A DNA stretch of 64,000 nt from Lama glama. Taxonomy: Eukaryota. The stretch spans positions 2,170,001 to 2,234,000 of the forward strand of contig CM052837.1 of NCBI GenBank assembly GCA_028534125.1, given 5' to 3'. Made by a program: the position numbers and the translations under genes. How positions within the stretch are numbered: the stretch's first letter is position 1; each line of letters opens with the position of its first letter. A model generated the notes under the pieces. That model had not been told where the DNA came from and did not search any database. It saw only the letters and a list, made by a program, of their open reading frames with translations. Positions 5,156 through 59,000 of this stretch are shown piece by piece.

Positions 5156-5939
5156 CTGGGGAAATAAAGGCAAAAAAAAAAAAATCAGCGAGCTGCGTTT
5201 CTCTGCTCCTCAGATACTGACACCCCAACGCAAGGCCTGTGACATAAATCTGATCACATTGCTCTTTTGCTCAAAGACTCAAGTGGCTTTCCACCACCAA
5301 CAGAAGAAAAAATTATCCACTGCCCACCTGCTCGTTAGGCCTTAAAATGACAGGATGAGTCACATCTGAGTAACACAGGGCTCGGGGGAGAGTTTGGCAG
5401 ATGGAGCCAGTGGAAAAGGATGAGGAAGAGTCTCAGGACACAGAAGGGGGTGTGGGGCATGTGTGGGGGTCAGGAGGAGATGAGGGAGGGGAGGTAAAGG
5501 CCACCAGCTGCCTCTGGTCCTTCTCCCCAGGGATGCAACAATGTGGTCCCAGACTACAAGGCGTCAGTGGTCACAGCGCCATCTAGTGGGGTTGCTCAAC
5601 ATCGCCTGTCAATTCGCTGAAATCGCGAAGGAAGGACAGTATGTACGCTCTCAAAGCTGTCAAAACGCTGCTGGAGTGTTTGCATTCCAAGCTGCTGCGG
5701 ATTTGCATATTAATGATTGCTTCCTGGCTCTCTCACTAGCTGCTGCCACGACCAAGAGGAGGGATCTGTCAGTGATGACCCGAGCCTACATCTCGGCTGC
5801 CCGAGTGCTGGGGATCTGCGACAGCTGTGACGGCTTATTCGGGGACTGGATTACCGTGAGTTCTTGTGGCCTCGGATTTAAAAAACACATTCGGTCTCCT
5901 CCTTTAGTCGTTACCCTCCTGCTTAAGTGCCAACTCACC

Positions 5940-7499: not shown

Positions 7500-7661
7500 T
7501 TCTGTTTTTGTTTTTTTTAATAGCTTGGCGAGCATCTCTTTTTTGGAGGGGGTGGTTATTAGGTTTACTTATTTCCTTTTTTAGTGAAGGTCCTGGGGCT
7601 TGAACCCAGGACCTCGTGCACGCTAAGCATGCGCCCTACCGCTTGAGCCAGACCCTCCCCC
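7500..7661 (-). mobile_element. tRNA-Ala-derived SINE (long form)
   Basis: Same head (cttgaacccaggacctcgtgcacgctaagcat) and same gg..tattaggttta linker as the copy at 533. Confidence 0.85.
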
Positions 7662-10000: not shown

Positions 10001-11685
10001 CCTATAGTTCCATAAACCCACGTGATTACTACTTGTTCGTCATACACAGCAGAGTCACGCCCTGATGGCAGGAACAGGGTGCCCAGGACGTCGCAGGATA
10101 CCATGCGAGGGAGGGGGACGTGGCCTCACCCCGTAGAGGGCCCTTTGTCAGACCAGGAGCTTGGCGTGAGAGGACCCTCGCGTGCCCTCTGCTGGCCTGA
10201 GGCACCTGCCGCCTGCTCACTGGGGCTGCGAGGAGGTCAGCCCCCGGGGGAGGGCCAGCCTGGACGCCGGGCCACCAGCCTCAGGGGGCGGTTTCTGAGT
10301 CTGGGAGTGGGGTTTCTCAGCAGCTGGTGGAGGAGAACAGGGGGCCATCACTGGACAAGCCCATTCTCCATTCCAGAGGCGGAGCCTGGCCCTGAACTAG
10401 TGTCACAGAGGAGCCGTGAGGCTGGCTGCAGGGACTCCGGGCCTCTGGTCCTGCCACCCCGCTGTGGCCCACAGACCTGCAGCATCCGCGGTGGAATGCA
10501 GCTGAGAGCCCCTGGGGGCGGCAGGACCACACAGAGCATCCTTCCTCCTTGCGGGCCTGTGCTTCTAAAGGACGCAGGATGCCTGAGGGGGGTTCCCGAG
10601 CCCACACCTGTAGGCAGCCTCGTCTCCTAACACAAGGGAGGGCATGGCGGTGGGGCTAGAAGCCCTGGGTCCTCCGCACCCGCATCCTAATCACAGAGGC
10701 GGGCCGGGAGGAGTTCCAGGTGCCCTGAAACCTCACAGCTAGGTCTGGCATTGATCTGACCAGGTGAGAAACAGGGAACACGGGGCCCGAGAGGCCCTTC
10801 CGTCCTGAGCGACGGTCTGTCTGCTCACACACGTGTCCTTGTCCACCTGGAGGGGTGCGTGTGGGGCCTCCTGGGCTCCGACGGCCAAGGCAGCACATGG
10901 CCACTTACAGCCTCTTCAGTTGGCCCCGCTGTCTCCCTCATTAGGGAAGGGCTTTAGCCACGTGAGCATTCCTGGAGCTTGGTTATGGACTGAGAACAAG
11001 GGCTGGGGGGGACAGGATTCCAGACACAGCCCCGAGACTCTGCCCCCCGACTCTCAGAGCCCGTGGGGAGGATGAACCACCTGTCCCGCGACTCTGCCAC
11101 ACTGTGGGGCCAAGCTGACCTGCAGGCCAGGAGGTCACGATCCGTCACCGGAGCCCTCAGAGGCAGAAGGGGAAACCAGAGGGGAGAGCGATGAGGAGTG
11201 TGAGGAGGACCAGACGCGACACACGGGACTGGTTTGAAGAGCGAGGGGCCACGCGACATGGAAGGTGGGGGTCCCCGGGGGCAGGGAGCAGCCCCCAGTG
11301 ACAGCCACAGCCGTACACCCAACAGGAACCGCCTCCTGCCAGGAACCCGCATGTGCGGGGCCCCCGGCAAGGGCCACAGCCCGGCTGCCACCTCCATCAC
11401 GGCCCCTCCAGCCTCGGGGCAGCCAGCCAGGCTGTGCCTGACTTCTGACTGCCAGAATCCACAGCCACCCAGTGGGTGGGTAAGCCACGCAGCTTGCGCT
11501 GATTTAGGAAGGAACAGAAAAGGCACATGAGGGCTTACGAGGGAGGCGCGGAGGGTTTGGTCATTTAAACTCCAACATATTTCTGTCCTGGCAGACAGGA
11601 AGGTTGCCAGGAAATATCGACAAAGGTGGCAAAAGGGGTAAAGAGGCAGGGGACTCTTTTCTATCAAGATAACCTGCTAACAGCA

Positions 11686-12072: not shown

Positions 12073-13201
12073 AACCTACTGACAGTAATTTACCTTTGGT
12101 GGGCGGTTCTGGCTCTGGGGCACAGGGACCTGGGTGGTTACTTTCTAGTTAGTTTTGGGAAGGACTTAACCAGGTGGAGATCTCAGCAGCCCCGTGGGGG
12201 CCTGGGAGCAGTTCTGGCTGGAGCTTTATTTGCTGTCCCTGGACACAGAGAAGGACCCTGCATCTGAAAGCAACACGAACTCTGACACTCTGCACCCACG
12301 TCCCACCATTAAGTGGCCTTTCGAGTGGGTCCAGCCTATCCAATCCCTCCTCAGAATTTACTGTCCTCCCATAAACTGAAACATCTCAGAGAAGACACAC
12401 AGGCTAATTAAGCTTCACATGCTTGACAGTGAAAATGAACCAGACCAGCGCACTCTTTCTCGAAACAGCCGGAAACTTCTGGAAGGTCCAGCACATAGGC
12501 AGAATTCTTTGGGCTTGGTCCACCCATTCCACTAATGGATGGGGCGGGGGTACAAGGTCACTGGAACGGCCAAGGCTTCGTTGGAGGCAGCAGTCAGGGG
12601 AGTCCTGAAAGCTGGCGGGGGTCCTGAAAGCTTTACAAGCCCTGCCCGTCCCTGTCAAGGTACCAGGAGATTCCCGGGCCGGCCCTGCTGTGAGATTTGG
12701 ATGCTTTCTGCCCAGGTGTGCATCTCCCGTGGGGGAAGCAGCAGGCTATGGGACAGGAGGGACCCGAATGGGGACGAAAGAAGAACAAAAGCCAACGGGG
12801 AGGATGCAGTGTCCCCAGGGCTGGCCTTGTCAGGACAGCGCCCCCACTGACGCGCGGGATGGTGACGGTGGGAGAAGCCCCTCCTCCCCCGAGCACCAAG
12901 CTGCCCTGCCCACAGGTCGCGTGCCTTCCTCCTCGGCACCACAGGCCCTGAGGAACAGCTGAGAGACAGCCTTCCTCCTCCACGTGCCCACCTTTCAACC
13001 AGTGACCGCCAGCCGCCATCCTGGTCACCTCTGGACCCTCCACAACTGAGTCTTACCCACTGTCAAATTAATACAATATTTCTGTGTTCATACAGAAATA
13101 TTTCCCTGAACTCAATGCCAGAGGGACCACCAGAGTCCAGGGCGTCTGCTCAGGGGCCTGAGAGCGGCTCCGGGCCCCAGCCCCGCCGCAGGACCACTCA
13201 C

Positions 13202-13469
13202 AGGGGGGGTCGAACGGCGTGTAGGGTCCCTCCTCGCCCTCCTCGTCCTCCTCGTCCTCCTCGTCCTGGTCGTTCTCGTTGTCCTCGTTCTCATTCTCCG
13301 CCTCGTCGCCAGCCTCAGCGACGGCGTCGTCCCTCCGGGCCCGGCTGCCGCCTCTGTCCGGGGCGCTGCCTGGCCCCGTCCCGTTCTCCACCGTGTGCTT
13401 GATGGGGATTCTGATGGCCACCTCGGACTCCCCGTTGGCATAAGCCCTGCTGTTGATCAGTCTCTGCCT
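13202..13469 (-). CDS. SLC24A3: SLC24A3 coding exon (probably exon 12), cytoplasmic loop with acidic tract
   Basis: 268 nt, phase 0-1; RQRLINSRAY...ENEDNENDQDEEDEEDEEGEEGPYTPFDPP; acceptor ttccag, donor gtgagt. Confidence 0.95.
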
Positions 13470-14231
13470 CTGGAAAGAGAGAGGCACGTGCTAACGCGGC
13501 CAGAGGGGTTGCAAATCCTCACCCACATCACCAGCTACTGGAACCTTTCTCGGTCAGCGGACAAGGGAGGTGCTCCCAGAAGACTCTTCAGACAAGTTTT
13601 AAGGGATTCCTCAAAGTAAGGACCAACTCAGACGCCCTGCTTCTGGGAGGAGGGGATTATCTTTTATGGCCCCTGGGAACGCGCAGGTCCCTTCAGAGGA
13701 AGCTCTGCGCGTCTCAGACGCGCACGTGCTCTCTCCCGGGGGTCTTGATCGCATAACGTGGTGTTAACGCTCTGCCCCAGGTTGTGGGGACTCCTTGGTC
13801 CACATGTGGGAAAGCCACACAGACGTGTTTGGATTAGTCTATCAATAAGGCTGCCACTCTGGAGAAAGGAATATCCAGGAAAATTCAGGTCGCAGACTCC
13901 GAATTACTGTAAACCAGCGTAACCTTGATTTAGCAACTACTTCTGTGCAAGTTCACATCAGAGGACTTTATCCAAAGAAAGATGAAAGGAAGAGATCGGT
14001 GGAAGGGACACACAAGTTTTCCTATCTGCCTGGGAGCTGGACTGCAAACACGTGGAGGGGAGAGCAAGGGCCAGGAGGCACGGGTGGGCCAGGGAGCAAA
14101 GACGTCAGGAAACGGCTTCGGGATACTGACGTGTGAAACGTGGAGGGACGCTCTCCTCCTTTCAGACCTAGAAACTTTCTCCCCTTCCCGGTGCCCACCC
14201 CCGCCCAGCGGCAATGTGCTTGCCCAGATAC

Positions 14232-19508: not shown

Positions 19509-19594
19509 TTTTTTTAAATGGAGGTACTAGGGGTTGAACCCAGGACCTCACGCATGCTAAACATGTGCTCTACCACTGAGCTACACCCTCACCC
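19509..19594 (-). mobile_element. tRNA-Ala-derived SINE (short form)
   Basis: Head plus A tail only; TSD tct(a/g)aattcagattt at 19494-19508 and 19595-19609. Confidence 0.88.
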
Positions 19595-25700: not shown

Positions 25701-27209
25701 CAACCACCACTTCTTGGCTGAGTGTGACTTGCTGTGGAATGACGCTGCAGGAAAGGGAGTGGAATCTAAACCATGCATCATGGGGATACTTGGCCTGGTG
25801 TGTTTGTATTTGACAAGACTCCTTTCCTCCTAGAGTGCACTCTAGTGTCAAAATAAACACAACCGAAATTAGTTTCCTTTGAGGATTTGGTTACCTGCCT
25901 TGAAATTGCTAGAACATACTGGAATGTTCCACAACAAGAAATGGAATTCACTGGTTCAGGTGCTATTGAAATGCTGAAATATGCTTTAATTGCACCGGTT
26001 GAGGAATCTGCCTTGGAAGAGAGAAACAAGAGAGACCAGCTCTTAGACACACCCTTTCAGCCAAACAAATACTTGTGGTTGGCTGGGCAGGAAAGTAAGA
26101 GAAGTGGAGAGGAAAAAAGTACCCTAAAGTTCAGTATATTTCACATTCAGATGGGGAGCTGAAATCTCTGCAGGTCCCAGAGCAGCTACGGACCACGGGG
26201 CCGACTAATTTCTCAGCCTCGCTCACGTGGAGAGTGTTCACCGGCTGCTCATCTACACGTATCAGTAATGACGTGACAGCCCAGTGGCCTCAGAGTGACA
26301 TTCTGGTGCCACGAAACCTGCCCCTGAGTTCTTCCTGCAGCTACATCTGCGCACGAGTTATGATTCCAGGCTGGAACAGAAGCTGCTCGGGAATCTGCAG
26401 CTCATGCACCCGTGGTCCTCCCGCCTGCTCCCTCGGTGGGAGCCAGGGTGCTCGGGCAGGGGGTATGATGACCTCAGAATCTGGCCTTGACTTGGCACAG
26501 GCTTGGGGTTCAGCCCAGGACCCGAGGTTTTAACCTCCTAACATCCCGGGAGGGCCAGCCTTTGGAAAGAAGAGGAAACAGACTCTCCTATCTTGCTCCA
26601 TCCCATCTGAAATGCCCAAGAAGACATCTTGAGGGTAAGGACTGCTGTAGGCTTGTCCACGCATCCCCCCGCCAAGGTTTCCACGAGCAAAGCCCGGGAG
26701 GCGTGGAGAGAGGGCTCCAAGACTGACAGACGGGACACCACCCGTGCACATCCTTTCTTAAGGTTTTCTGCACAAAAGCAGCAGAAATATTTCCGAGGGC
26801 GACTGTGATCATAACTTGCTTGTCTTTTGGGCAGCGATGTTAGCAAAGGGCAGCGACACTGAGCCACAAGTCGGCACCTCCTGTTTGCCAAGGCAGGGCG
26901 GAGCTTGTGCTAACCGAGCCGTTGGTCTGAGCGGGACCACATCTGCAGCTTTTTCTGTGCTGCATTTCACCCCCAAGGACGGGGGAGATGTCACCCCTGC
27001 AGTTGGCAGCCACGTGCAGGTGGGTTCTGTGAGGAGGTTCTCCCTGACCTCTGGCCTCTGACCTCTGACCTGAGGTGCTTCCAGACATCTTGCTCCCTTT
27101 CAGCCTGTTGATCATGGTTATTCGGAGAAGACTCCCTTCTTATGGGTCAATATTTTTTATGGGTATATATATATACCCATACACAATATACACAATATAG
27201 ATACTGTGT

Positions 27210-27312
27210 CTTTTTAAATTTTTTTTTCTGATGGAGGGACTGGGGATTGAACCCAGGACCTCCTGCATGCTAAGCACGCGCTCTACCACTGAGCTGTACC
27301 CTCCTCACCCCT
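27210..27312 (-). mobile_element. tRNA-Ala-derived SINE (short form)
   Basis: Head with B box GGTTCAATCC and AGC anticodon loop, A-rich tail. Confidence 0.85.
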
Positions 27313-28283
27313 GAGACTGTCTTAAAACAAGTCCTCCCAGATGTCTCCTCCTCGCCCTCTTGGACAGATGAGAGAAGGGGTAAAAGTATCTTAACACCCT
27401 GGATAGTGCGTAACATTCATGGTCAACGCGATGTGCTCCCTGCTGCACCATCTGAAAATCACAGATTCTGAAAATCACAGAGGTGTCGCTCCAACAAAGC
27501 TAGTGCTCATTCTGCTGAAAATGAAGACCAGCAGGCTCTGTCCTTTTTCTGTCTCATCCTTGGCATTATATAAAACCACGAAAGTTGTCTACCGACAGCG
27601 CTGCAAATACCTATTTCTGAGACGTTATTTCACATAATCTTACTCCCACAGATCAAACATTGGAAAAGCATAACAACATGCTCAGCAAGTCCCATTTCTA
27701 GCTCCATTTCAAACGTATTTGACTTGCTCAGAACCCATCTCAGAAAAGGGGATTGGGACATTGACCCCAATGCAAATATTCCTATATATTTAACTTGAGC
27801 AAATTTTTAAAAAAAATCTATCAAAAAATCACTGATTTGTCAGAGCTCTAAGACCTTGAATGTCAGGCAGAACTTTACTGCGTTAAAGGTCACCGACGTG
27901 CCTCCACCTCTGGTTCCTGAGACAGACATGGTATTCGGAATATGCTGATGCGATCTGGACAACTGGAAAATATTCGCCAAGTGTTAACCATGGCCTAGCC
28001 AATGGCTGCTGCAGAAAGACGCAGCTACGTCGCACCGCCTGACCTCGGTGACAAAGCCCGAGAGAGAGGAGGACCCCAGAAGGAAGCCCAGCAGCCCAGC
28101 AGCCCAGCCAAGGGAGAAGGTCTCCGCTCCGTGGAAGCTGAGTTAATTTCTTTGCTGAGATGGCCAGAAGGTTCCGAGCCACCCTGACGCCCCCACCTCT
28201 TTCCTAAACCCTGACCCTGGTCTTGCATCCACTGTCTCTACAACACAGCAAGGGGAAACCGGGAGGGAAAAGGAGGGACTTAC

Positions 28284-28309
28284 CAGGAAACTTGTTCATC
28301 ATAAATGAA
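28284..28309 (-). CDS. SLC24A3: SLC24A3 26-nt microexon (probably exon 8), FIYDEQVS(W)
   Basis: Minus strand reads tttttcacag|TTCATTTATGATGAACAAGTTTCCTG|gtaagt. It supplies the phase 0->2 bridge required between the flanking exons. Confidence 0.93.
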
Positions 28310-30816
28310 CTGTGAAAAAAATCAAAAGGAGAGAAGATTAGATACACACATGCACACACACGCTTTACAAACGCATGTTATCCGCCCTTGCTGCTGGCTG
28401 GGGGGAACTGGGGCTGGGCTGGGCTGGAGGATGCAGCACTGGTGGGCACGAGACGAGAGCATCATGCCATCCCGTCCCTCCTGCGTTTTCTCTCCAAGGG
28501 CGGAGTGAGTGGGAAGCCCCTCCAGCCTGGCTCAGTACAGCCAGACGCGCTGCAGGACTTCAGCTCTGCAAGGGGACGGATGCAGGAGCTGCTGGGTGCT
28601 CCCAAACACTCGCCCCTTCTGGGCCACCTGTAAGCTGTCTGCACATCTCTGCGTGTCGTATGGCACCTTCACGCTTTTATGGAGGCACTTGGACTTCCGT
28701 GGACTCCATCTTTTTCTTTCGGTCAACCTATTCTTTTGTTTCCTTAAAAGATTTTATTTTTTAAAGAAAATTTCGCATCGCTACCAGAGGTGGAGAGTCA
28801 GCACCACTTGGCAACACGTGGAGAGAGGAAAAACACTCAATGCAGTAACAGTGAAAACCCTGGCTGGACACTGTTGGTGCCGGTGTCCTTAGCCACAGGC
28901 CTGCCCTTTTGTGAGAGGGGATTAGTGAGGATAGGAAGCCATGGAAGACATGCAAGTGCCAGACAGAGACCTCCCCCGATTGGTTAGGATCACACAGCAG
29001 GACTGGATTTATTTAAGCCCTCGTCCATAACGCATCTAAAATTGCTCCTCATTTTGGTGGAAAAAGTGGTAGAATCCTAGCCCTTTGATTTATACAGGGA
29101 GTGGAGCCACAGAGAATAGGAGGAATTTTCCTGGCGTTGCTCCATCTGCTGCAGAGTTGGTCCTAGAACCCAGCCCTGGCTCTTAATTTCACGTTTTTCC
29201 GTGACACCCTTATGTGCCCAGATGGCATGATGCTGACACAAGACGAACGCCCCCAGACTTCATCCAAGCAGATTCACAGTTCCTCCTTTGCACACTCACA
29301 GGACACCACTGATTTGAGTGCCATCACCTCCGAGTGGCCTTCCAGCAGGGGCAGTGGCCCTCAGGAGATTCCAGGGCAGAACCCTCTGGGCATAGAGGGT
29401 GTCGACCACACAGAGATGGTAAACTCGGCTGACAACTCGGCATCACTTCAGCAACCAGCGATTCTAACCACCGCCAGTAGTGGGAGACACAGAGAAAACC
29501 TCAAAGACCAGCAGGTACGGCTCAACAGGCACATGAAAGGAACCCCCTCCAATTATCCCAGAGAAGCACAGAGAAGGATGGGGAGAAACAGGCCACCCTC
29601 ATTCGTAACTTGCTCTTCCCAACAAGATGCTGGAAAAGACACCGGCTTCATCAGTTTGTCGTGCTGTTGCGCGTCATTATCGGATCCAGCAGGCCGACAT
29701 TTGGGTAAGAATGTCAAAGCAGAGCGGGAAGAGAAACAGAAGCAAAGGGATCCACCCCGTGGTCCTGGCTGGACGGTATGAAGTCCACTCCCCAGGGAGG
29801 CGCGCATTCACAGTCACCTGTATATAATCACTGGCTTTCAAAAAGTCCAAGGAATCAGGGAACAGAACAAATGATTTAAGTTGGAAAATGTTTTCTATTA
29901 ATTGAACTTAATTCAATATCGGCCCTGGACAGCCGGCTGGAACAATCAATTTGTAGCCACTTACGAGCACAAGATACTGGTGAAGAGTTTATCAGGGGAC
30001 CAACCTAATTTCCGTCTACGGGGAAGGCAGCCGATACTCTGTGAAGTGAAAGCAGCGTTGAGGAAGCCTTATTCTGTACCATCTAGTTGACAGGTGGGGG
30101 CGGAGATCCGTATGTCTCAGCTGTTGATTTTTGTCTCAATGATCGAATCAGTGAAAAAAAAATCAGAATGGGCTTAATTGTGCAAAAGATTCCAAAGTGA
30201 GGACAGAATTTACAGGGAACACAATAAATCAGAAATAGTGGGGCACGCCTGGACGAGACTGGACTTGACACACGATTAAGGACAGAGCCCGGAGCCTGAC
30301 GTCAAGGTGATGGCTGTGGCCCGGGGTGTTGGAGGTGGGGGTGTGGTTCGGGGAGGCAGTCGGGGAGCGAGAAATGCAGGCATCTATGCAAGTACCAGCG
30401 AACGGGCGATGGGAACCTCCGAACCCCAGGGGCAGTGATGCCGGCCACTGAGCACCCGGAGCCCCGACGACCTCGTGGCCCAGGAGCGATCGCGGTCTGG
30501 GTTGTACCCCACTACTCCAAGAGGGTTGGGTGGGAATACGAGGCGTCAAAAAAGAAAAATAAAATGGATAAAAGGGCTGGAAATCAGGCCTTTAAGAAAA
30601 CCTAAGCGGAAAGAGGCGTGTTGGTGGAGAGAAAGGCGGCGGAGGGTGAGCTACGACCTCCGGCCGGTGTCTGGTGGAGCCTGGAGGAGGCCGACCCGCG
30701 GACGGACACAACTCAGCACTGAGACGGGGGAGCTGCCCTGCCCACAGCGTTCCTTCCGGAGGGCACGTCACCGGACCATCCCGACGGGGCCCGGGCCCGC
30801 CGTGTCTGCCAAGGTC

Positions 30817-31652
30817 GGCGCAGGCAAAGGTCGCTCTGGATGAACCACGTGTGGGTCAGAGAGCAGCCCCCACCAGCGTGTGCAGCAGACGGCTCACCGG
30901 GTGTCGCTGATGGCTGCAGGGAGCGGACTTCTTGTTCCTTACACATTTTACTTTATTTAGTTCTCTTAAGACAAGTGCTTCATGTTCCTCTGTATTTCCA
31001 CGCTCTTTCTGGGAGTAAAAGAAGACATCTTCCGCCACCCACGAGGGCGGGGTGACTGGGGCGGAAGAAAATCATTCGCGCACCTGAAACAAGAAACCGC
31101 GCCCCCAGTTCCAGCCGGCCCCCACTAGGTGGCGCTCGCGTCCCAGCCCCGCGCCCGGCGGCGCTGCCCAGGCAGGCAGGTCAGGGAGGTCGACATGAAG
31201 TCGGACCAGGTCCCCTTCGTAGCTCCATTAAATCTCCTGGAAGGAGGGCAAGCACCTCAAGACAGACAGCCTCCCGCGGGCGCCTGCAGCCAGCCCACGG
31301 CTGTCACGGGGCGAGATGGCGGTCTGGAGGCGGCTCCTGCCCGGCGTCTTGAGATGGGGACGGGTGGGTCCCTCCTCTTACTCCAACACACAGTCTCCAG
31401 TCCAGGGACCTGCCTAGTCGCCTTCCGAGCTGACCCACCCTTTTCCCAGGAGGGATTTTGAAAATGAGCCTCGGGAAGGCAGCTCTCTGTGCTCCACTGG
31501 CTGTCTGGGGCCAGGCCCACAATCGCTCCAGGACACTGTGGGGCTGGCTGGCACTGATTATCTGGACCCCCATTTGCTGCACACGCTGGTTGGGGGAGGG
31601 GGCTGCTCTCTGGCCCACACGTGGTTCATCCAGAGCGACCTTTGCCTTCGCC
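30817..31652. repeat. Inverted repeat pair (30817-30892 and 31570-31652) with 677-bp spacer
   Basis: By hand alignment, 72 of 76 aligned bases are reverse-complementary, plus one 7-nt indel. Confidence 0.95.
31106..31137 (+). promoter_or_regulatory. Predicted CTCF site with upstream motif
   Basis: CCACTAGGTGGCGC (31122-31135) fits CCASYAGRKGGCRS exactly; CAGTTCC lies 9 nt upstream; CpG-rich context. Confidence 0.7.
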
Positions 31653-33319
31653 CTAAGCTTTCCACCTGTTCTGCAGATGTGCTAAATGGGAACACACAGG
31701 CGTGAATCTGAAAAAACACTCTCTTCCTCCAGGCCTGGGAGAACCGGTTGGGTACCATGGAAACCAGCTTTGCAGTGCTGGAGTCTGCTCCAGAATTCAT
31801 CTGAGAGGGACAGGCAGGTGAATCCCTGGATGGCATCCCAGGGGCCTGCCCGGGCAGCGGCCCACTCACGATGGAGCAGCAGCGGGACGACAGGCAGGGA
31901 TCACCCAGGTGAGGGGGCAGGAGGGGAGAGGCTGGGCTGGCAGGCCCTGGGTTGGCTGACCAGGAGTGCAGGGCGGCCGCCTTGCAGAAGCGAAGACCTT
32001 GTAACCTGGACCGTGATCACTGGCACCGTCGGCATTCTGAGCAGTGAAAGTAATAGTAAAAAAGCACATCTTCTCCCCTTTGCTGGGAAGGGACGCAGCC
32101 CCTTGGACACTTCTCACCCCAGAGCGTGGAGATGCCCTCAGGAGATGCGCCCACATGGAGGCCTGACTTCCTTAGCTTTGGGGACCGAGGGTGCAGGGTG
32201 GTCTAGCTGAGGCCACGGGGATACCCTTTGAGGAATCAGACAGAATACACTGGAAAACGGCTGTCAGGCACAGATACGGTTTCCCCGTGAAGGGTACACA
32301 GGAACTCCGGTATTAGGATTCCTGCTGGGCCCAGCTGGCGGTGACGGGGCTGCAGGAGGGTAGCGGTCGAGAGGATCTGGAGACCGGGCCTGAGCAGAGC
32401 TGGGCATCCGCCAGACACAGGCAGGGCAGGCCACAGGAGGAGGGAAGCGGCCAGAGGACGGAGTTAGGATGCAGGAGATGATGGTTTTCAACCGATGGCC
32501 ACGTTTGCTGAGCAGTGCAGAAACAGACTCATAACTGAAACGTCCAAGCTGCTGCCCTCGGGAAAGGGAGACGCTCCTCTGAGCATCCTGCAGTCTGGCC
32601 AACCAACTCCCGGGTCCGGGAGCAAACGCACGATGCCCCGGCTCCTTCCCTCTCCCGGCACCACTGATGGAAGTCCTTCCTCCTCTCAGTGGCAGGGATT
32701 TCTGAGCAGGTGACCCTTTGTACGCCCACAGGTGGTTTGTTTAAGGAACTTGAACATCCTTGCCTGTGAGAATCTTTCGGCTGCCGGACTCATTCCCACT
32801 TGGCCGCTTGGCCGGGGGAGCTGAGATGTAATTATGATCGTCAGGGCCTTGGGATCACTAAACTGGAGAGAGAGGAGGGGGTCGGACTGGAGGGGGCTGT
32901 GGAGCCGGGGTAGGGGTGGGGAGCTGAAGGACAGTCATCAGCATGAGCTGAAGGCATTTTCCTCTCACAGAAAGGGTGAGAGAAGACTTTGCATCATCTT
33001 AACGAAAGGACTCCAGGAGTGGGGAGGCAGACGCTCAGTCTAAGGACGTAAAGTAAGTGCTCCAGACACCCCAGTGGTGTTGGATTGCGTGGTGGGTGAG
33101 GTAAAATCAGACTGCACGAGGCAGACTGTGTTGGAGGGAAAATCCGAATTCTTTGCAGGGGTGATGTGACCGTACATCATATTCACCCGCTCTGGTAAAT
33201 CTGAGGTATCGTAGCTCCCTCACCTTGGGCAAATCCCTGAATTCCTACAGCCTCGGTTTTGCCACCTGTAAAATGGGACTCACGTAACTGCTAGCTTGCA
33301 GAGTTGTATTTTTCCCCCT

Positions 33320-33490
33320 TTTTTTAAAATTTATTTTTTATGTTTTGATTGGAGTAGAGTTGATTTACAATGTCATGTTGGTTTCTGGTGTACAGCACAG
33401 TGATTCAGTTATATATACATATGTTCCTTTTCCTATTCTTTTTCATAATAGGCTATTGCCAGATACCGAAAATAGTTCCCCGTGCAGTTG
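33320..33490 (-). mobile_element. Short LINE-1 3' terminal fragment
   Basis: Reverse complement of the same 3' UTR (gttgatttacaatg...ctggtgtacagcacagtgattcag). Confidence 0.82.
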
Positions 33491-36400
33491 TGAGTACTGA
33501 ACTAGAACATCTTCGTCCACAGACTCAGCAGGGCACTCAGTCCCACGGGAAGCAGGCGGCCTATGCTTGTTGGAGCCAGCGCGTGCCTGGGAGGAAGCAG
33601 GTTTTGTTTTGCTGGAAGGATCTGCTCTCCACAGCTGCGCTATCCAAGGTGGTAGGCACGAGCTGTCCAAGATGGCTACGTACAACTGAATTAATTAAAG
33701 ATTCAGTTCCTCGGTCTCACTAGCGGCATTTCAGGAGTGTGCCCTGGGGCTGCAGGACGGAACAGCGCCGCTCGGGCCGCCTCCGGTGGCCGGGTCGGCT
33801 GACTTGTGCCTCCTTGTCCGCACGGAGTCCCCTTCAGAGTGGGGGACCGCAGGGAGCAGAGGGGGCGTCACCTCAGATGAGCCCCGATGCCTGCCAGCAC
33901 CCAGGTTGCCTGGAGGGGCCCCCAGCTGGTGCCTTCTCCAGGTGGCCAGCACTCCCCAGGCTAGGTCCGTGATCCCTCTGAGTGACCTGGAACCTGCCTC
34001 AGAAGCCTGTCCACTCCCCCTGGAAGTTTCCCTTCTCTTGATGCTCATAATCCCGGATCTCAAAGCAGAGCTGAAGGGTAAAAATAAAGTATTCCTTTTA
34101 GGGCAGCTGTGAGATTGACGATATAATGAATCATTTGCATTTATGTAAATTATGTGATTATGTAAATTACAGTAACATTTCCATAACAGAGGCTGCCTGG
34201 GCCTGCCGGAATTTGGAGAAAGAAGAAGGTGGGGAGGCCTGAGCTGCCCATCCTCATCCTCAGCTGGGGGTGGGTGGTCTGTAAGGCTCGCAGACTATCC
34301 ACGGGTAGGGGCTCACAGGACATGCTCCGAAGAGCCCAGAGTGCTAGCGGGACCTAAACGGTGACACCTGTCGTGCAGAGGGAGACCCACATCGTGGGGG
34401 AGCCTCCTGGGCCACGTCCAGCTTCTCTGGGCTTGATGCTTCGCTGTAGAGAATGTCACCAGGGGTAAAGGGGGGACACCTGACGGGGAGGCGAAAAGGC
34501 ACCAAACATGCTGTATGTTTCTGAAACCATGACTGCTTTAGACAAGAGCACATTCTTATTTCCTTCTGCTCCCTCTTTAAAAACAACAACAAACTAGAAA
34601 ACAGCAGAGAGCAAAGGTTAGGTGGATTCCTGATGCTGACGTGGCATGAACTGAGTCCCTTGTCTCTAAGTTAGCTGTTTGAAGCTCTGTTGGTTTCAGG
34701 ATGTGCGCGCTGGTCTGACTCCTGTGGTTTGGCTTCTTGGCCTGTCCCTCTGCATCAGCTGTTTTGGAATCTGGGTAGTAATGACCCTCTGAGCACTCCC
34801 CTGGCCCAGCGGCCCTTCAGCATCCCGGGAGAAGTCATCTTCCCTGCTCTTTGGATCCCCAGCCCTCACAGATTGTCCTCAGGGCTCCTCTGCGTGGGTC
34901 TGAAGGGCCTCTCGCTGGGATGTACATGGAAGTGGCATCTGGTCCCACTCAGTCCAGACGTGCCCTCCAGGTGAATGAGTGCTTCATTCCATCACCTTGG
35001 GGGACCTGCAAGTCCATCTTCTGAACATTTCAGAACCATACAAAAGGGGAGAGGGTGAAAAAAAAACCCTAATAGTTAAAATAAATGACTGGAATGGTTG
35101 GTAATTATCTGTGGGTAGGAGGAGAGCTTTTAAATACAGGACTTTCCAGTGCCCATTGCCGGGTCTGATGGAGAAGCTTCGTGTTATGGAAGGAAAACCT
35201 GAAGAAAAGTGCTTCTGTTACCATAGAAACAGAAAGAGGAGACTAGGAAACCTTGACAAAAAGATTCAGCGTGTGGAGCGGCGGCCTGGGGCTGGCACTG
35301 GGGCAGATTTGGGGAAACCGAGAAACCCCTGTGCTAAGTGCTGCTCTTCTGGACACAAGGCTGCTTTGCTCCTCACACCATTTTTAAGTCTCAGGTGGAG
35401 ATGACCCCAAAAACTAACAGCTGTCAGAAATCCAGACAACCAAGCCACCACCATGCTCCACCTTGGCAATTCCCAAAATTTACCCTGGAGACGATCATTG
35501 CCACGCAGCAGACGAACATCATGTCCAACCATATTTGAGATTGTGTTTCTCCAAGTGTGGTGGGTGCCGCTGGCATCAGATTCACAAATGAGGATCTTGG
35601 TTAAGGTGAAAGTTTCCTGGGTCCAACCCCCGAACCTACTGAATTAAAATCTCTGGGTTGTGTATTTCCAGTAAGCATGCTGGGCGTTTCCAGGGCATGC
35701 TGAATTTGGAGGAACTTCAGTTAAAGTAAAAAGGATCAAGACTAAACCCTGAGGTCTCAGATTTTATCTTTTCCATTACTTCCTAACAGTGGAGAAATGT
35801 AATTTTTCTCAAGATCCTAAAACTCCAGCCCTGACGCCGGGTCTGTAAAGACTCTGTCCAACCTCTAGGTCACAGCAAAGAATCACTTGCTTTTACACTC
35901 TGTTGCTGTCGGAGCCGCTGGCGTCCCATGTGCAGCTGGCTCAGCTCTGATTCATCCACAGCAGACAGGTTGCTCTGCCCAAAATCCCTGCGCGGGTGAG
36001 CATCACCCACAGCCAGAGGAAGCAAAATCGCTTTACTATTTCACACGTCATTAGCAGCATCACACTTGTTCTATCTCAAACATGTCCAGATAAATTTGAC
36101 AGAAGACAGGCTATTTCACACACAGTCCAGGAAGCAACTATGTGAAAACAGAGTGAAGCCAACGCCGGCAGTTCTGCCACTGGGCGTGGATGTCTCTGAG
36201 TTTATGCTCCTGGGGAGGCCTTGGACTGTGCTGTTCTGTCTCATCACCTCGCCTCTAGCAGGGCAGGCATGTTTTTGAACTTCAGCAAAGTGCAGAGCTC
36301 TGTTCAATTACACCACCCCCTAAGATGTCTCTTGAAAAAAGTAACTTTCAAGAATCATCCTAAAATACCCCAAAGGCAGAAGAGCAGAGCGCACGTGATG

Positions 36401-51250: not shown

Positions 51251-52809
51251 ACTACAGAGCTACAGTAAATAAAACAGCATGGTGTTGGCACAAAAACAGA
51301 CATACAGACCAATGGAACAGAACTGAGAGCCCAGAAATCAACCCACACACCTATGGTCAATTAGTCTTTGACAAAGGAGGCAAAAATATACAACAGAGAA
51401 AAAGTCAGTCTCTTCAGCAAGTGGTGCTGGGAAAGTTGGACTGACTCATGTAAATCAGTGAAGTCAGAACACTCCCTCACACTGTACACAAAAATAAACT
51501 CAAAATGGCTTAACGACTTGAACATAAGACAGGACACCATAAATCTCCTAGAAGAGAACATAGGCAAAACATTCTCTGATATAAATGGCAGCACTGTTTT
51601 GTTAGGTCAGTCTCCCAGAGCAATAGAAATAAGAGCAAAAATAAACAAATGGGACCTAATCAAACTTACAAGCTTTTGCACAGCAAAGGAGACCATAAAC
51701 AAAATGGAAAGACCACCAATGCGATGGGAGGAAATATTTGCAAATGATGCGACTGACAAGGGCTTAATCTCCAGAATATATAAACAGCTCATACAACTCA
51801 ATAACAACAACAACAAAACAAACAAACCACCCAGTCAAAAAATGGGCATAAGACCTAAACGGACATTTCTCCATGAAACCATATAGATGTCCAATAAACA
51901 CATGAAAAGATGCTCAATGTAGCTAATGATCATTGAAATACAAATCAAAACTACAAGGAGGTATCATCTTACACCGATCAGAATGGCCACCATTAAGGAG
52001 TCCACAAATGATAAATGCTGGAGAGGCTGTGGAGATGAGGGAGCCCTCCTACACTGCTGGTGGGGATGTAATTTAGTGCAGCCGCTGTGGAAAACAGTAT
52101 GGAGATTCCTTAAAAAACTAAAAATAGACCTACCATGTGATCCAGCAATCCCACTCCTGGGCACACATCCGAAGAAAACTCTAATTCAAAAAGACACCTG
52201 GACCCCAATGTTCACAGCAGCATTTTTTACAAGAGACAAGACATGGAAGCAGCCTAAACGTCCACTGACAGATGNNNNNNNNNNNNNNNNNNNNNNNNNN
52301 NNNNNNNNNNNNNNNNNNNNNNNNNNNNNNNNNNNNNNNNNNNNNNNNNNNNNNNNNNNNNNNNNNNNNNNNNNNNNNNNNNNNNNNNNNNNNNNNNNNN
52401 NNNNNNNNNNNNNNNNNNNNNNNNNGTGAAGTAAGTCAGACAGAGAAAGACAAATATCATACCACTTACATGTGGAATCTAAAGAAATGACACAGATAAA
52501 TTTATTTTATAAAAAGAAACAGACTCACAGACACAGAAAACAAACTTATGGTTTACCAAAGGGGCAGGAAGAGGAGGGATAAATCTGGAGTTTGGGATTA
52601 GCAAATACAAACTACTGTATATAAGGGAGATAAACAACAAGTTTACACTGTACAGCACAGGGAACTATATTCAGTATCTTGTAATAACCTAAAATGGAAA
52701 AGAATATGAAAAGAAATAAATGTGTGTGTGTGTGTGTATAAAATTAAATCACTATGCTGTACCCCTGAAACTAACACAACATTGTAAGTCAACTCTACTT
52801 CAATTAAAA
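51251..52809 (+). mobile_element. 5'-truncated LINE-1: disrupted ORF2 C-terminus plus 3' UTR
   Basis: Translates to L1 ORF2 motifs ([39 protein letters not shown]...HCWWGC knuckle) with frameshifts; exact 17-bp TSD aagataaaacagtctat at 51234-51250 and 52810-52826. Confidence 0.95.
52275..52425. other. Assembly gap (151 N) inside the L1
   Basis: Run of N. Confidence 1.
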
Positions 52810-53994
52810 AAGATAAAACAGTCTATTATCTTAAATATCATCCTTAAAAAACTATTCCATATTTTAGTTTGTATTATATAGTCACAATACCTTTCTTGCA
52901 TGGATTTTTGTCTTAGAGTTGGAAACCATGTTTCTCTCTCCAACATGTGCCTTCTTCCCCGTATTACCAACATGTGAAGACATTATTTTTTGTATGACTT
53001 GCAATTTATTCCACTCTTCTCCTTGGAGATCTTAGAACCCTCTTTCTTTGAAAATTTGTATCATTTTCTTTTTAGACTTGCTTGCTCAGCTGGTGTTTTG
53101 GGATTTCTTTGCATTGGACTTGTATGTTAATTTTTCCAATTGCTTTTTTAGATGTTACCCTCATTCTTGCTGGAGTATGTTCTTAAGTAGTTTCCTATAA
53201 AAGGTTATGTGAGAGGTAAAATTCTGAAGATTTTGTTAGAAAAATTTTTATTTTATCTACCACTTGATTGTTTCTCTAGCTAACTATAGCATTCTGGGTC
53301 CAAACTCATTACTTTCCCTAACATTCGAAGTCTAGTTCTCTTGTCTTCTAGCATTCAGCGTTGACAATTACAGTCTGAAGTTAGCCCCGTTCTGTTCCTT
53401 TGTACGTGATGTACATGACCTGTTTCCTTTCTGAAAATTTTAGGATCTTTAGTTTGACGTTTCAGCATCTCATGCAGATGTTTGTTTCTAGGTATGGGTT
53501 TATTTTCATTCTTTGTGTCTGCTACTGGGTTGACTCTTTCAATACATAGATTTATGCTTTCCTTCTGTTTAGAGGAAAGTTCCTACGATTATACATTTGT
53601 TGCCTTTCTCTCCTTCAACTTTTGTTCTCTCATCTTCTGGAATTCCAGTTAGAGTTCATATTGGAGCCCCCACATCGACCTTCCATGTTTCTTAATTTTT
53701 CTGTCATATTTTCCATTGCCTTTTCTTTCTGCTCTGAGCACTGAATGTTACTATTCTTCTGACGTCTCTCAAGTCTCTCTTCTGGCCATCAGCATATCGA
53801 TTTTATTATTTTAGTCCTTTTTATATTCTCTACATTTTGGGAGTCGTATTTAAACAATTAAAAATAATTTCTTTTTACTTTTTTATTGATTGATTCCCCT
53901 CTTCCACTTTTTTTTTTTAAATAGCAGTCTGTTCTGGTTTTCTGGCTTCAATATCTTTCTGAAACTCATGAGGATACTAGTTACATTTTTCTCC

Positions 53995-54582
53995 CATTTT
54001 TTTTGAAGTCTAGTCAGTTTACAATGTTGTGTCAATTTCTGGTGTACAGCCTAATGTTTCAGGCATACGTACACATACATATATTATTTTTGTATTATTT
54101 TTCATTATAGGTTACTATAAGATATTGAATATAGTTCCCTGTGCTGTACAGAAGAAACTTGTTGTTCATCTATTCTGTATATTGTAGTTAGTATCTGCAA
54201 ATCTCAAACTCCCAGTTTATCCCCTCCCACCCCCCTCCCTCTGGTAACCGTAAGTTTGTTTTCTATGCCTGTGAATCTCTTTCTGTTTTGTAAATAAGTT
54301 CATTTGTGTCTTTTTTTTTTTAAGATTCCATATATAAGTGATCTCATATGGTATTTTTCTTTCTCTTTCTGGCTTACTTCACTTAGAATGACGATCTCCA
54401 GGTCCATCCATGCTGCTGTGAATGACTTTATTTTATTCTCTTTTCATGGCTGAGGAATATTCCATTATATAAATATACCACAACTTCTTTAGTCATCTTT
54501 TGATGGACATTTAGGTTGTTTCCATGTCTTGGTGATTGTAAATACTGCTCCTGTGAATATTGGGGTGCATGTATCTTTACAA
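53995..54582 (-). mobile_element. LINE-1 3' end
   Basis: Antisense 3' UTR and ORF2 tail; flanking ta(g/a)ttacattttt is a probable TSD. Confidence 0.9.
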
Positions 54583-55174
54583 ATTAATTACATTTTTGAA
54601 GTTCATTTCTGCCACCTGAATTACCTTTTGGTAACTTGGTGGACAGCTGTTCTGTTTATCCATTTTGATCCTTCCTTTGGGAAATCTCTTCAAATGCCTG
54701 ACGGCCTCCAGAAGCATGCTCATGCATGTGAAGTAGAGGCTGAGTCCTAGGGAGACTGGCCTGAGCTCGCTTTGCAGGGGAGCAGACCTACCTCCCCAAA
54801 GTTCTCTCAGTGGAGAGCTGACTGCTGGCCCTGTGAAGGCGCACAGGGTGTGCAGACAGGCGAGCTTCACTTTAGGCTGTGTGGTCAGTGCTTTAGGGCC
54901 CCCAGAAGGCAAAATAAAGAGGAGACATAATACTGAGTGTGTTCACTTGGCTGCTTACCTGATGCATCCTCTTTGGTCCTGGACATTATATAGAGGTCCA
55001 GAGTTAGCTCAGACTTGGCGTCTCAGCCACAGACTCCTACGGCAGGAGTCACAAGGCTCCCTGGATAGGTCCTCACTTGCTCGAAAGACCGTTCTTCTGG
55101 GTTTCCCTTGGGAGAGCCACTCGTCAGCTGATGGAGGTGCATGAGGGCCCACTGATTTGATGGTTTAGGGTTGG

Positions 55175-56310: not shown

Positions 56311-56480
56311 TAGAGGAAGGGCATAACTTAGGGGCAGAGTGCGCACTTAGCACGCACGAGGTCCTGGGTACAATCCCCAGTGCCTCTGTAAGTAAATAAA
56401 TAAATTCATAAATAAACAAACAAATTTAATTACCTTCCCCCTCCCCCCAAAAAGAGAATTCTAATTAAAAATAAAAAAAA
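56311..56480 (+). mobile_element. tRNA-Ala-derived SINE (long form)
   Basis: cttagcacgcacgaggtcctgggtacaatccccag head; TSD taaaa(c/t)gtac(g/a)gctg at 56296-56310 and 56481-56495. Confidence 0.85.
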
Positions 56481-58339: not shown

Positions 58340-59000
58340 AAAAAATTGTCAGTTGACTGGTCAATTTACAATGTTGTGTTAGATTCTGGTGTACAGCAGA
58401 CTGATAGATTACACATATATATTCCTTTTCACATTCTTTTTCATTACAGCCCATTATAAGGTACTGAATACAGTTCCCTGTGCTGTACAGGAGGACCTTG
58501 TTTATCTATTTTATATATAGGAGTTAGGATCTGCAAATCTTGAACTCCCAATTTATCCCTCCACCCCCTCCCTGCTGGTAACCATAAGTTTGTTTTCTAC
58601 CTCTGTGAGTCTGTTTTGTAAATAAGTGCATTTATGTCATTTTTTTTTAGATTGCACATGTAAGTGATATCATTTGGTATTTTTCTTTCTCTTTCTGGCT
58701 TACTTGCCTTAGAATGATAATCTCTAGATCCATCCACGTTGCAGCAAATGGCATTATTTCATTCTTTTTTTATGGCTGAGTAGCATTCCATTGTCTGTCT
58801 GTCTATCTATCTCAGTTTCTTCATCCAGTCATCTGTCAATGGATATTTATTTATTTGTTTGTTTGTTTGTTTGTGTTGTTTAATGGAGGTACTGGGGATT
58901 GAACCCAGGACCTCATGCACGCTAAGCATGTGCTCTACCACTGAGCTATTTCCCTCCCCTTAATGGCATTTCGGTTGCTTCCACGTCTTGGCTATTGTAA
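58340..59000 (-). mobile_element. LINE-1 3' end (host of the SINE at 58848)
   Basis: Antisense 3' UTR; probable TSD aggctga(a/g)ca at ~58318 and ~59001. Confidence 0.9.
58848..58961 (-). mobile_element. tRNA-Ala-derived SINE (short form) nested in an L1 3' end
   Basis: Intact A box TAGCTCAGTGG and B box GGTTCAATCC, (AAAC)n tail; L1 sequence resumes on both sides. Confidence 0.87.

What the first reader, a model, noticed from the sequence alone, without database searches (positions are those of the whole stretch)
30817..31652. Near-perfect non-TE inverted repeat bracketing a textbook CTCF site: a possible flipped or flippable insulator cassette
Seen: 30817-30892 (ggcgcaggcaaaggtcgctctggatgaaccacgtgtggg...) reappears reverse-complemented at 31570-31652 with only 4 mismatches and a 7-nt indel. 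It resembles no repeat family I recognise. The 677-bp CpG-rich spacer contains CCACTAGGTGGCGC with an upstream CAGTTCC. Established: CTCF sites act directionally in loop extrusion, and inverted duplications at both ends of a segment are a signature of staggered-break or template-switch inversions. Inference: this lineage may carry a micro-inversion that reversed a CTCF site, or the arms may be kept alike by conversion or recurrent flipping. Caveat: ~76 bp is short for efficient mammalian NAHR.
Basis: partly seen in the sequence, partly recalled or inferred. Interest (0 to 1): 0.75.

Follow-up and report, generated by a model that had tools for sequence, protein, structure and literature searches.

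The report
Short inverted duplicate beside CTCF motif
An 80-base stretch really does recur backwards 677 bases away, around part of a CpG-rich region with a strong CTCF-type motif, but it looks like an old one-off copying scar, not a switch, and whether the piece between was ever flipped could not be tested here.

Summary
Bases 30817-30892 recur reverse-complemented at 31570-31652, with 4 mismatches and one 7-nt indel. Chance does not explain this: 0 of 300 shuffles reached the alignment score.

The pair is the only unique, high-identity inverted pair in the 64-kb window. It has sharp ends, no target-site duplication and no second pair.

The 677-nt spacer carries CCACTAGGTGGCGC at 31122-31135 (+). 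The CpG-rich stretch runs about 30201-31400, so the left arm lies inside it and does not bracket it.

The arms differ by 5.3% plus the indel, and their longest shared run is 34 nt. That fits neutral decay of one old event. It does not fit arms kept alike by conversion or efficient recurrent flipping.

My best reading is a one-off replication or repair accident. An inverted copy of the left arm was either pasted 0.68 kb away, or arose with a 0.75-kb micro-inversion through one staggered break. Only the second would have reversed the CTCF motif.

The scan has noted similar short inverted duplicates elsewhere in this genome, for example s1-861987. This is ordinary in kind.

The parts
30817..30892 (+). 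Left arm of the inverted repeat (76 nt). It lies inside the CpG-rich stretch and is probably the source copy.
   Evidence: It has 6.6 CpG per 100 nt, in surroundings of 7.7-10 per 100 nt.
31570..31652 (-). Right arm (83 nt), the reverse complement of the left arm with 4 mismatches and 7 extra nt in a C-run. It is probably the derived copy.
   Evidence: It has 4.8 CpG per 100 nt, in surroundings of 2.0-2.3 per 100 nt. One CpG of the left arm reads TpG here.
30893..31569 (.). Spacer of 677 nt. In order: an AT-richer 100 nt, a CpG-rich core (30993-31350, o/e 0.81), then a CpG-poor tail.
31122..31135 (+). CTCF-type core motif CCACTAGGTGGCGC.
   Evidence: It matches a recalled degenerate consensus at 14 of 14 positions. 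That consensus has 3 matches in the window against 0.05 expected. Against the printed consensus CCACNAGGTGGCAG (PMC5291250) it has 2 mismatches, both in the last two letters.
31106..31112 (+). CAGTTCC, 9 nt upstream of the core.
   Evidence: That it is an 'upstream motif' is recalled knowledge and was not tested.
30201..31400 (.). CpG-rich stretch that meets the usual CpG-island figures. It extends 0.6 kb to the left of the left arm.
   Evidence: All 11 of 11 consecutive 200-nt windows starting at 30201 to 31201 have CpG o/e 0.62-0.88 and GC 0.49-0.70. The next windows fall to 0.51 and then 0.26-0.39.

Best explanation
This is the scar of a single, old replication or repair accident. It is not a device. 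An approximately 76-nt piece of a CpG-rich intronic region (the left arm) was copied in reverse-complement orientation and laid down 677 nt away (the right arm). The likely route is a template switch, or templated fill-in at a break, followed by a switch back. On this reading the spacer and its CTCF-type motif kept their orientation.

Since then the two copies have drifted apart neutrally. They have gained 4 substitutions, one of them a CpG-to-TpG change in the copy that lies outside the CpG-rich stretch, and a 7-nt indel in a C-run.

What is shown: the repeat, its sharp ends, its uniqueness in the window, its divergence, and the absence of a target-site duplication.

What is inferred: the direction left to right, the mechanism, the age, and that the spacer was not inverted.

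Likely consequences today are small. If the region is transcribed, the arms would pair into an imperfect double-stranded RNA stem of about 76 bp. The DNA arms are too short and too diverged for efficient recombination.
For: The repeat is real and discrete. The alignment ends sharply at both ends of the arms. Neither the outer nor the inner extension scores above shuffles: 127 and 187 of 300 shuffles did as well.

There is no direct repeat of 4 nt or more at the outer edges within +/-3 nt. The arm occurs nowhere else in the window. The other 27 of 28 inverted pairs in the window are multi-copy dispersed repeats at 65-79% identity.

Divergence is 4 of 76, JC 0.055 (95% interval 0.014-0.135), plus one indel. 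The longest identical run is 34 nt.

The right arm has twice the CpG density of its surroundings (4.8 against 2.0-2.3 per 100 nt). The left arm fits its surroundings (6.6 in 7.7-10). This hints that the sequence is native to the left site.

Template switching that creates new inverted repeats is documented. It occurs without spacer inversion in 31% of high-confidence human-chimpanzee events and with it in 23% (PMC5453318, passages read).

A run that may be the source sample holds 1.00 of 287 sampled 31-letter words of 29800-32700 in contigs assembled independently of this genome assembly. A second such run holds 0.99. This speaks against a scaffolding join that the reads do not contain.

Another agent read a similar 84-nt case in this genome the same way (s1-861987). 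That is an unchecked note, not support.
Against: Nothing here separates 'pasted copy, spacer untouched' from 'inversion with one staggered break'. Both give exactly this sequence.

The documented short template switches act over tens of bases, so a 677-nt jump is at the long end.

The CpG-density hint rests on 4 and 5 CpGs and is weak.

No microhomology longer than about 2 nt can be read at the junctions by eye.

No independent individual or species was actually examined at the junctions. The 12 DNA runs not marked as a possible source hold 0.88-0.95 of the words. The four junctions and one arm together make up only about 4% of the words, so those shares cannot show whether the structure is present.

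Genome-wide copy number of the arm is unknown.
Confidence: 0.42

Rival explanations
1. A micro-inversion of about 0.75 kb occurred with one staggered break (the INVdup type). The left arm was duplicated by fill-in, and the whole spacer, including the CTCF-type motif, was turned round in this lineage. The arms are a by-product of the inversion, not its cause.
For: A single inverted pair of non-repetitive sequence at the two ends of a segment is the published signature. In Drosophila, 17 of 29 inversions carry such duplications. Twelve of them have a duplication from one breakpoint only. Sizes run from 46 bp to 1.9 kb, and mean identity is 88% (PMC1885836, passages read).

Inversions flanked by duplications (dupINV, INVdup, dupINVdup) are named classes of human complex variation (PMC5338099, passage read). 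Template switches that create an inverted repeat with an inverted spacer make up 23% of the short events in PMC5453318. The sharp arm ends and missing target-site duplication fit this reading as well.
Against: There is no positive evidence that the spacer is inverted. No second inverted pair exists: 30893-31092 against the reverse complement of 31653-31852 scored 12, and 34 of 300 shuffles did as well. Purine skew of the spacer is opposite to both flanks, but the window's own controls show that this means nothing: in 5 of 12 comparable places, this one among them, the middle block has the opposite sign. In the present orientation the CpG profile falls smoothly from the core to the right flank. 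The alternative order would be no rougher, so this is neutral.
Confidence: 0.3
2. The arms are the terminal inverted repeats of a DNA transposon or MITE-like element, or two fragments of a low-copy dispersed repeat that landed in opposite orientations.
For: Terminal inverted repeats around a segment of less than 1 kb are the form of a non-autonomous DNA transposon. Genome-wide copy number could not be checked.
Against: There is no target-site duplication of 4 nt or more. There is no other copy in 64 kb, whereas the window's real repeat families recur many times. No Pfam family was found in 8 of 8 ORFs between 29.2 and 32.6 kb, and there is no Rfam match. The CpG-rich stretch runs straight across the left arm into the flank, so the arms do not bound a discrete insert. 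Two independent fragments would not be expected to share both end points.
Confidence: 0.08
3. It is an assembly artefact: a small contig placed backwards so that its overlap with the neighbouring contig appears as an inverted repeat.
For: A reversed contig gives exactly X-a-M'-a'-Y. The scan's notes list many short inverted duplicates in this assembly. No reads could be laid.
Against: Arms produced that way should be identical. These differ at 4 bases and by a 7-nt indel. There is no N run nearer than 52275. Contigs built independently from the reads of two runs that may be the source sample hold 1.00 and 0.99 of the 287 sampled words, about 3 of which are expected to span each junction.
Confidence: 0.07
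4. It is a flippable cassette. The arms recombine repeatedly, so both orientations of the CTCF site exist in the population, and gene conversion keeps the arms alike.
For: Recurrent inversion between inverted repeats is real in primates (PMC3961182, abstract and passages read). Close repeats can recombine through matches shorter than 50 bp (PMC2583991).
Against: The longest identical run is 34 nt, and the arms are 76-83 nt with 5.3% divergence plus an indel. Reported minimal efficient segments are 134-232 bp in cultured cells and 300-500 bp in human meiosis (PMC2583991). The recurrent human inversions cited involve much longer repeats, for example 7-kb duplications. The differences are spread along the arm, with no homogenised tract.
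Confidence: 0.03
5. It is a selected RNA hairpin. The pair is kept because the pre-mRNA stem does something, such as acting as an ADAR substrate or looping out the spacer.
For: On the strand of the gene noted in this window, the arms pair in both the minimum-energy and the centroid fold of 30790-31680. The z-score is -10.6, and 0 of 20 shuffles fold as well. The duplex energy is -153.8 kcal/mol. Two RNA runs hold 0.22-0.23 of the words of 29800-32700.
Against: Any inverted repeat folds this way, so the fold is no evidence of selection. None of the 4 mismatches is compensated; in the minus-strand RNA three are unpaired. No exon was seen between the arms: no Pfam family in the ORFs scanned. It is not known which part of the stretch the RNA runs hold.
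Confidence: 0.05

Closest known systems
Template-switch mutations that create inverted repeats (four-point model; Loytynoja and Goldman 2017, PMC5453318; Monttinen and Loytynoja 2022, PMC8794818, seen in a search listing only)
   Same: A stretch is the exact-ended reverse complement of a nearby stretch. There is no target-site duplication. The result can form a hairpin. Event types exist both with and without spacer inversion.
   Different: Published events involve copied pieces of tens of bases over distances of tens of bases. Here the piece is about 76 nt and the jump is 677 nt. Here the ancestral state is unknown, so the event itself is not demonstrated.
Inversions with inverted duplications from staggered breaks (Ranz et al. 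2007, PMC1885836) and the dupINV / INVdup classes of human complex structural variants (PMC5338099)
   Same: Non-repetitive sequence is duplicated in inverted orientation at the two ends of a segment. Only one of the two breakpoints is duplicated. The duplicate size lies within the published range (46 bp to 1.9 kb), and identity is about 87-95%.
   Different: Those inversions span kilobases to megabases and were shown by outgroup comparison. Here the segment is 0.68 kb, and inversion has not been shown.
Microinversions flanked by inverted repeats (Potapova, Kondrashov and Mirkin 2022, PMC8755829, abstract read)
   Same: A small inverted segment flanked by near-perfect inverted repeats. Replication or repair mechanisms, not recombination, are proposed.
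   Different: Those are 17-33 nt long with short pre-existing flanking repeats. Here the scale is about 25 times larger.
NAHR-mediated recurrent inversions between inverted repeats (Aguado et al. 2014, PMC3961182)
   Same: Inverted repeats flank a unique segment.
   Different: Those arms are long with long identical tracts. Here the arms are 76-83 nt, the longest identity is 34 nt, and there is no sign of homogenisation.

Membership tests
Local inverted duplication by template switch or templated insertion | A segment is the reverse complement of a nearby segment on the same molecule, with discrete ends | tested here: met
   76 against 83 nt, 4 mismatches and one indel. No extension beyond either end.
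Local inverted duplication by template switch or templated insertion | The derived copy is absent from the ancestral or outgroup sequence | not testable with these tools
Inversion with staggered-break duplication (INVdup) | Inverted duplicates of non-repetitive sequence at the two ends of the segment | tested here: met
   The arm is unique in the window.
Inversion with staggered-break duplication (INVdup) | The segment between the duplicates is inverted relative to an outgroup | not testable with these tools
   No outgroup sequence is available. The purine-skew proxy has no power.
Inversion with staggered-break duplication (INVdup) | A second inverted pair from the other breakpoint (optional; present in 6 of 18 published cases) | tested here: not met
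   The score was 12, and 34 of 300 shuffles did as well. Case counts come from PMC1885836.
DNA transposon or MITE | Target-site duplication flanking the terminal inverted repeats | tested here: not met
   No direct repeat of 4 nt or more within +/-3 nt of the outer arm ends.
DNA transposon or MITE | Multiple dispersed copies | tested here: inconclusive
   No other copy in the 64-kb window. The rest of the genome and Dfam were not searchable.
NAHR flip-flop inversion | Arms with identical tracts at or above the minimal efficient processing segment | tested here: not met
   The longest identity is 34 nt. Reported ranges are 134-232 bp and 300-500 bp (PMC2583991).
NAHR flip-flop inversion | Both orientations present among individuals | not testable with these tools
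CTCF binding site or insulator | Match to the core motif | tested here: met
   14 of 14 positions of a recalled degenerate consensus, with 3 matches in the window against 0.05 expected. Two mismatches to the printed CCACNAGGTGGCAG.
CTCF binding site or insulator | CTCF occupancy and orientation-dependent loop anchoring | not testable with these tools
   This needs ChIP or CUT&RUN and Hi-C in this animal.
CpG island | At least 200 nt with GC about 0.5 or more and CpG o/e at least 0.6 (criteria recalled) | tested here: met
   11 of 11 windows of 200 nt from 30201 to 31400 have o/e 0.62-0.88 and GC 0.49-0.70.

The most novel reading that the evidence does not exclude
The pair marks a camelid-lineage micro-inversion of about 0.75 kb. 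It turned a strong, occupied CTCF site inside an intragenic CpG island from the minus to the plus strand. The site now faces away from the two minus-strand CTCF-type motifs at 5576 and 10182, which would have rewired loop anchoring in this locus. That would be a natural counterpart of the engineered CTCF-site inversions.
Probability: 0.08. Interest if true: 0.55.

Novelty: new member of a known kind. Interest (0 to 1): 0.2.

Why it matters
As it stands it matters little. Short inverted duplicates of unique sequence are a known by-product of replication and repair, and the scan's notes list other short inverted duplicates in this genome.

It would matter more if outgroup comparison showed that the spacer was inverted. 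Natural, fixed reversals of a single strong CTCF motif are rarely documented at base resolution. Such a case would give a clean test of the orientation rule of loop extrusion in an unmanipulated genome.

Separately, the scan's notes hold a number of 80-260-nt inverted duplicates in this assembly. A genome-wide census with reads could tell whether that reflects a mutational habit of the lineage or a habit of the assembler.

Tried and rejected
Transposon reading: rejected for now. There is no target-site duplication, no other copy in the window and no Pfam or Rfam match. The CpG-rich stretch crosses the left arm.

Eroded long palindrome: rejected. Neither the outward nor the inward extension of the arms scores above shuffles.

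Second inverted pair expected from two staggered breaks: looked for and not found.

Spacer orientation from strand composition: tried. The spacer's purine skew (-0.04) is opposite to both flanks (+0.20 and +0.13). The window's own controls show that this means nothing: the correlation between the middle block and its flanks is 0.35, and the middle block has the opposite sign in 5 of 12 comparable places, this one among them. I draw nothing from it.

Junction microhomology: read by eye. Nothing beyond an ambiguous 2 nt.

Shares of words in other runs: considered as a proxy for presence of the structure in other organisms, then rejected. The junctions and one arm make up only about 4% of the sampled words, and the shares are 0.88-0.95.

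I saw only an open frame on the minus strand at 13068-13487 with an acidic run. Its two Pfam matches are far below the curated cut-offs. I ran no further search on it, because a single exon cannot find a full-length protein under that tool's length rule and the answer would not change the verdict.

The recalled 15-letter degenerate CTCF consensus was not found in the paper library (0 papers), so it remains recalled. A printed consensus was found and used instead.

Supplementary files of papers were not opened. The event-length and distance tables of PMC5453318 may bear on how unusual a 677-nt jump is.

Full report
**What is there**

The repeat finder reports two adjoining pieces:
- 30817-30874 with 31595-31652: 58 nt, 95% complementary.
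- 30867-30892 with 31570-31595: 26 nt, 88% complementary.

A gapped alignment joins them into one pair, 30817-30892 (76 nt) against the reverse complement of 31570-31652 (83 nt). The pair has 4 mismatches and a single 7-nt gap in a run of C. The mismatches lie at 30821, 30856, 30888 and 30890. The longest identical run is 34 nt, at 30822-30855.

Chance is excluded. The alignment scores 60; 300 shuffles gave a mean of 8.5 and a maximum of 16, and 0 of 300 reached the observed score. A 33-nt core of the arm occurs just twice in 64 kb, once on each strand, and 0 of 100 shuffles gave two matches.

**How discrete it is**

The similarity stops sharply at both ends of the arms.
- The 200 nt outside the arms do not align in inverted orientation better than shuffles (127 of 300 as good). 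Nor do the 200 nt just inside (187 of 300 as good).
- There is no second inverted pair of the kind two staggered breaks would leave (34 of 300 shuffles as good). The mirror arrangement is also absent (157 of 300).
- No direct repeat of 4 nt or more flanks the outer ends within +/-3 nt.

**Is it a dispersed repeat?**

A minus-strand comparison of the whole window with itself lists 28 inverted pairs. Twenty-seven are members of multi-copy families at 65-79% identity. Several of these coincide with tRNA-like stretches that ARAGORN and Rfam pick up.

The pair under study is the only one whose sequence occurs nowhere else in the window, and it is the most similar pair. The 2.5 kb at 30000-32500 matches nothing else in the window. 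Rfam has no match at E <= 1 in 27000-35000 apart from a tRNA-like stretch at 27232-27303.

The rest of the genome and Dfam were out of reach.

**The surroundings**

CpG content is high from about 30201 to 31400. All 11 of 11 consecutive 200-nt windows have CpG o/e 0.62-0.88 and GC 0.49-0.70, and further right the values fall to 0.26-0.39.

This corrects the picture of a 'cassette'. The left arm lies in the middle of the CpG-rich stretch, and the right arm lies about 0.2 kb outside it. The arms do not bracket a unit.

The spacer (30893-31569, 677 nt) consists of three parts:
- an AT-richer 100 nt;
- a CpG-rich core at 30993-31350 (o/e 0.81);
- a CpG-poor tail (o/e 0.25).

CCACTAGGTGGCGC stands at 31122-31135 on the + strand. 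It fits a degenerate CTCF consensus that I recalled from memory at all 14 positions. That pattern has 3 matches in the window against 0.05 expected from shuffles; the other two are at 5576-5589 and 10182-10195, both on the minus strand.

The recalled consensus was not found in the paper library. A consensus that is in print, CCACNAGGTGGCAG (PMC5291250, passages read), is matched with 2 mismatches, both in its last two letters. At that looseness the window has 7 matches against 3.0 expected, so the printed pattern alone is a weak test.

CAGTTCC lies at 31106-31112, 9 nt upstream. That it is the CTCF 'upstream motif' is recalled knowledge, not a test. The motif is therefore a good CTCF-type site on paper, and occupancy is unknown.

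**Gene context**

I saw an open frame there on the minus strand with a long acidic run. I could not confirm the gene's identity, because Pfam gives only two matches far below cut-off.

**Age and maintenance**

Four differences in 76 aligned bases give a distance of 0.055, with a 95% interval of 0.014-0.135. With assumed (recalled) mammalian rates of 1.0-2.2e-9 per site per year, the point estimates are 12-27 million years, and the intervals run from about 3 to 67. Error-prone synthesis at the event itself could make it younger.

One of the four differences is a CpG in the left arm that reads TpG in the right arm. The right arm is the one outside the CpG-rich stretch.

The right arm carries 4.8 CpG per 100 nt in surroundings of 2.0-2.3. 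The left arm carries 6.6 in surroundings of 7.7-10. This hints, weakly because it rests on 4 and 5 CpGs, that the sequence is native to the left site and was copied to the right.

The differences are spread along the arms, and there is no homogenised tract. A 34-nt longest identity is far below the lengths reported for efficient mammalian homologous recombination:
- a 20-fold drop in recombination when the identical run falls from 232 to 134 bp in cultured cells;
- 300-500 bp in human meiosis;
- rare events below 50 bp between close repeats are recorded (PMC2583991, passages read).

**What made it**

Two known processes give exactly this present-day sequence.

(i) A template switch or templated insertion. 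Synthesis jumps to the complementary strand nearby, copies about 76 nt backwards, and returns. Loytynoja and Goldman's four-point model documents such events between human and chimpanzee. Of the high-confidence events, 31% create an inverted repeat without touching the spacer and 23% create one with an inverted spacer (PMC5453318, passages read). Those events are much shorter in range than 677 nt.

(ii) An inversion with one staggered break. Fill-in of the overhang duplicates the sequence between the nicks in inverted orientation at the far end of the inverted segment. Ranz et al. found such duplications at 17 of 29 Drosophila inversions. They are often from one breakpoint only, 46 bp to 1.9 kb long, with mean identity 88% (PMC1885836, passages read). 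The corresponding human classes are named dupINV, INVdup and dupINVdup (PMC5338099, passage read). Potapova et al. describe 17-33-nt microinversions flanked by inverted repeats and favour break-induced replication (PMC8755829, abstract read).

Only (ii) would have reversed the CTCF-type motif.

I tried to separate the two from the sequence alone and failed. No second pair exists. The CpG profile is about equally smooth in either order. The purine skew of the spacer (-0.04 against +0.20 and +0.13 in the flanks) looks suggestive, but at 5 of 12 comparable places in the window, this one among them, the middle block has the opposite sign.

I give (i) 0.42 and (ii) 0.30. These mainly reflect published frequencies, not anything in this sequence.

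**Reads**

The look-up of sequencing runs found 14 DNA runs, under five coded organism labels, that hold at least 0.88 of 287 sampled words of 29800-32700. Two of them are marked as possible sources of this DNA and hold 1.00 and 0.99.

About 3 sampled words are expected to span each arm boundary, and those contigs were built from reads independently of this assembly. The full shares therefore speak against a join that the reads do not contain. They are not independent of the sample.

The other 12 DNA runs hold 0.88-0.95. The boundaries and one arm together make up only about 4% of the words, so these shares cannot say whether the structure is present there.

Two RNA runs hold 0.22-0.23 of the words. 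Which part they hold is unknown.

I did not repeat it.

**Consequences today**

Folded as RNA of the minus strand, 30790-31680 pairs the two arms in both the minimum-energy and the centroid structure. The z-score is -10.6, and 0 of 20 shuffles fold as well. The arm duplex alone is -153.8 kcal/mol.

This follows from the repeat itself and is no sign of selection. None of the four mismatches is compensated; in the minus-strand RNA three are unpaired. If the intron is transcribed, such a stem would be a plausible target of A-to-I editing. That is an inference from general knowledge and was not tested.

**Comparison and verdict**

In kind this is a short local inverted duplicate of unique sequence, a known product of replication and repair. 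This instance is not described anywhere I could search.

The scan's notes list comparable cases in the same genome. Another agent read an 84-nt pair at GPX3 as a young neutral copy (s1-861987). Other notes describe 90-, 128- and 240-nt pairs with spacers of about 1 kb. These are unchecked notes and do not count as support. They do suggest that a census would be worthwhile.

The 'flipped' half remains open, and one outgroup alignment would settle it. I score interest at 0.2, and class it as a new member of a known kind.

Noticed in passing
window 5576-5589 (-) and 10182-10195 (-): Two further exact matches to the recalled degenerate CTCF consensus, both on the minus strand. With the plus-strand site at 31122 this makes 3 matches against 0.05 expected by chance. 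The minus-strand sites lie to the left and the plus-strand site to the right, so the arrangement is divergent.
   Followed up: no
window 607-679, 7584-7657, 19518-19591, 27232-27304, 58884-58956 (all -): Five tRNA-like stretches found by ARAGORN: four Ala-AGC and one Leu-CAG. One of them is also an Rfam tRNA match at 41.6 bits. Several fall within the multi-copy inverted matches (for example 27205-27306 with 56313-56418 at 75%). They look like heads of a tRNA-derived SINE family, not tRNA genes.
   Followed up: partly
window 30075-30750: Strongly G-rich and purine-rich plus strand in the left part of the CpG-rich stretch: GC skew +0.12 to +0.43 in 150-nt windows, and purine skew +0.20. Such skew is typical just downstream of some CpG-island promoters, which would here point to a plus-strand, antisense transcript. 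This is speculation; no transcript was examined.
   Followed up: no
It has no Pfam family above cut-off. Gene identity was not verified here.
   Followed up: partly
window 52275-52425: The only N run of the window (151 N). It sits between inverted copies of a dispersed repeat: 52182-52274 with 54494-54586, and 52426-52830 with 53973-54382.
   Followed up: no
same genome, other pieces (notes s1-859758, s1-863221, s1-859329, s1-860067, s1-862772): The scan's notes hold a number of 80-260-nt inverted duplicates of unrecognised sequence, with spacers of about 1 kb in some, in this assembly. 55 notes fit 'invert arm spacer'. This may reflect a lineage mutational habit or an assembly habit. A census against reads would tell which.
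   Followed up: no
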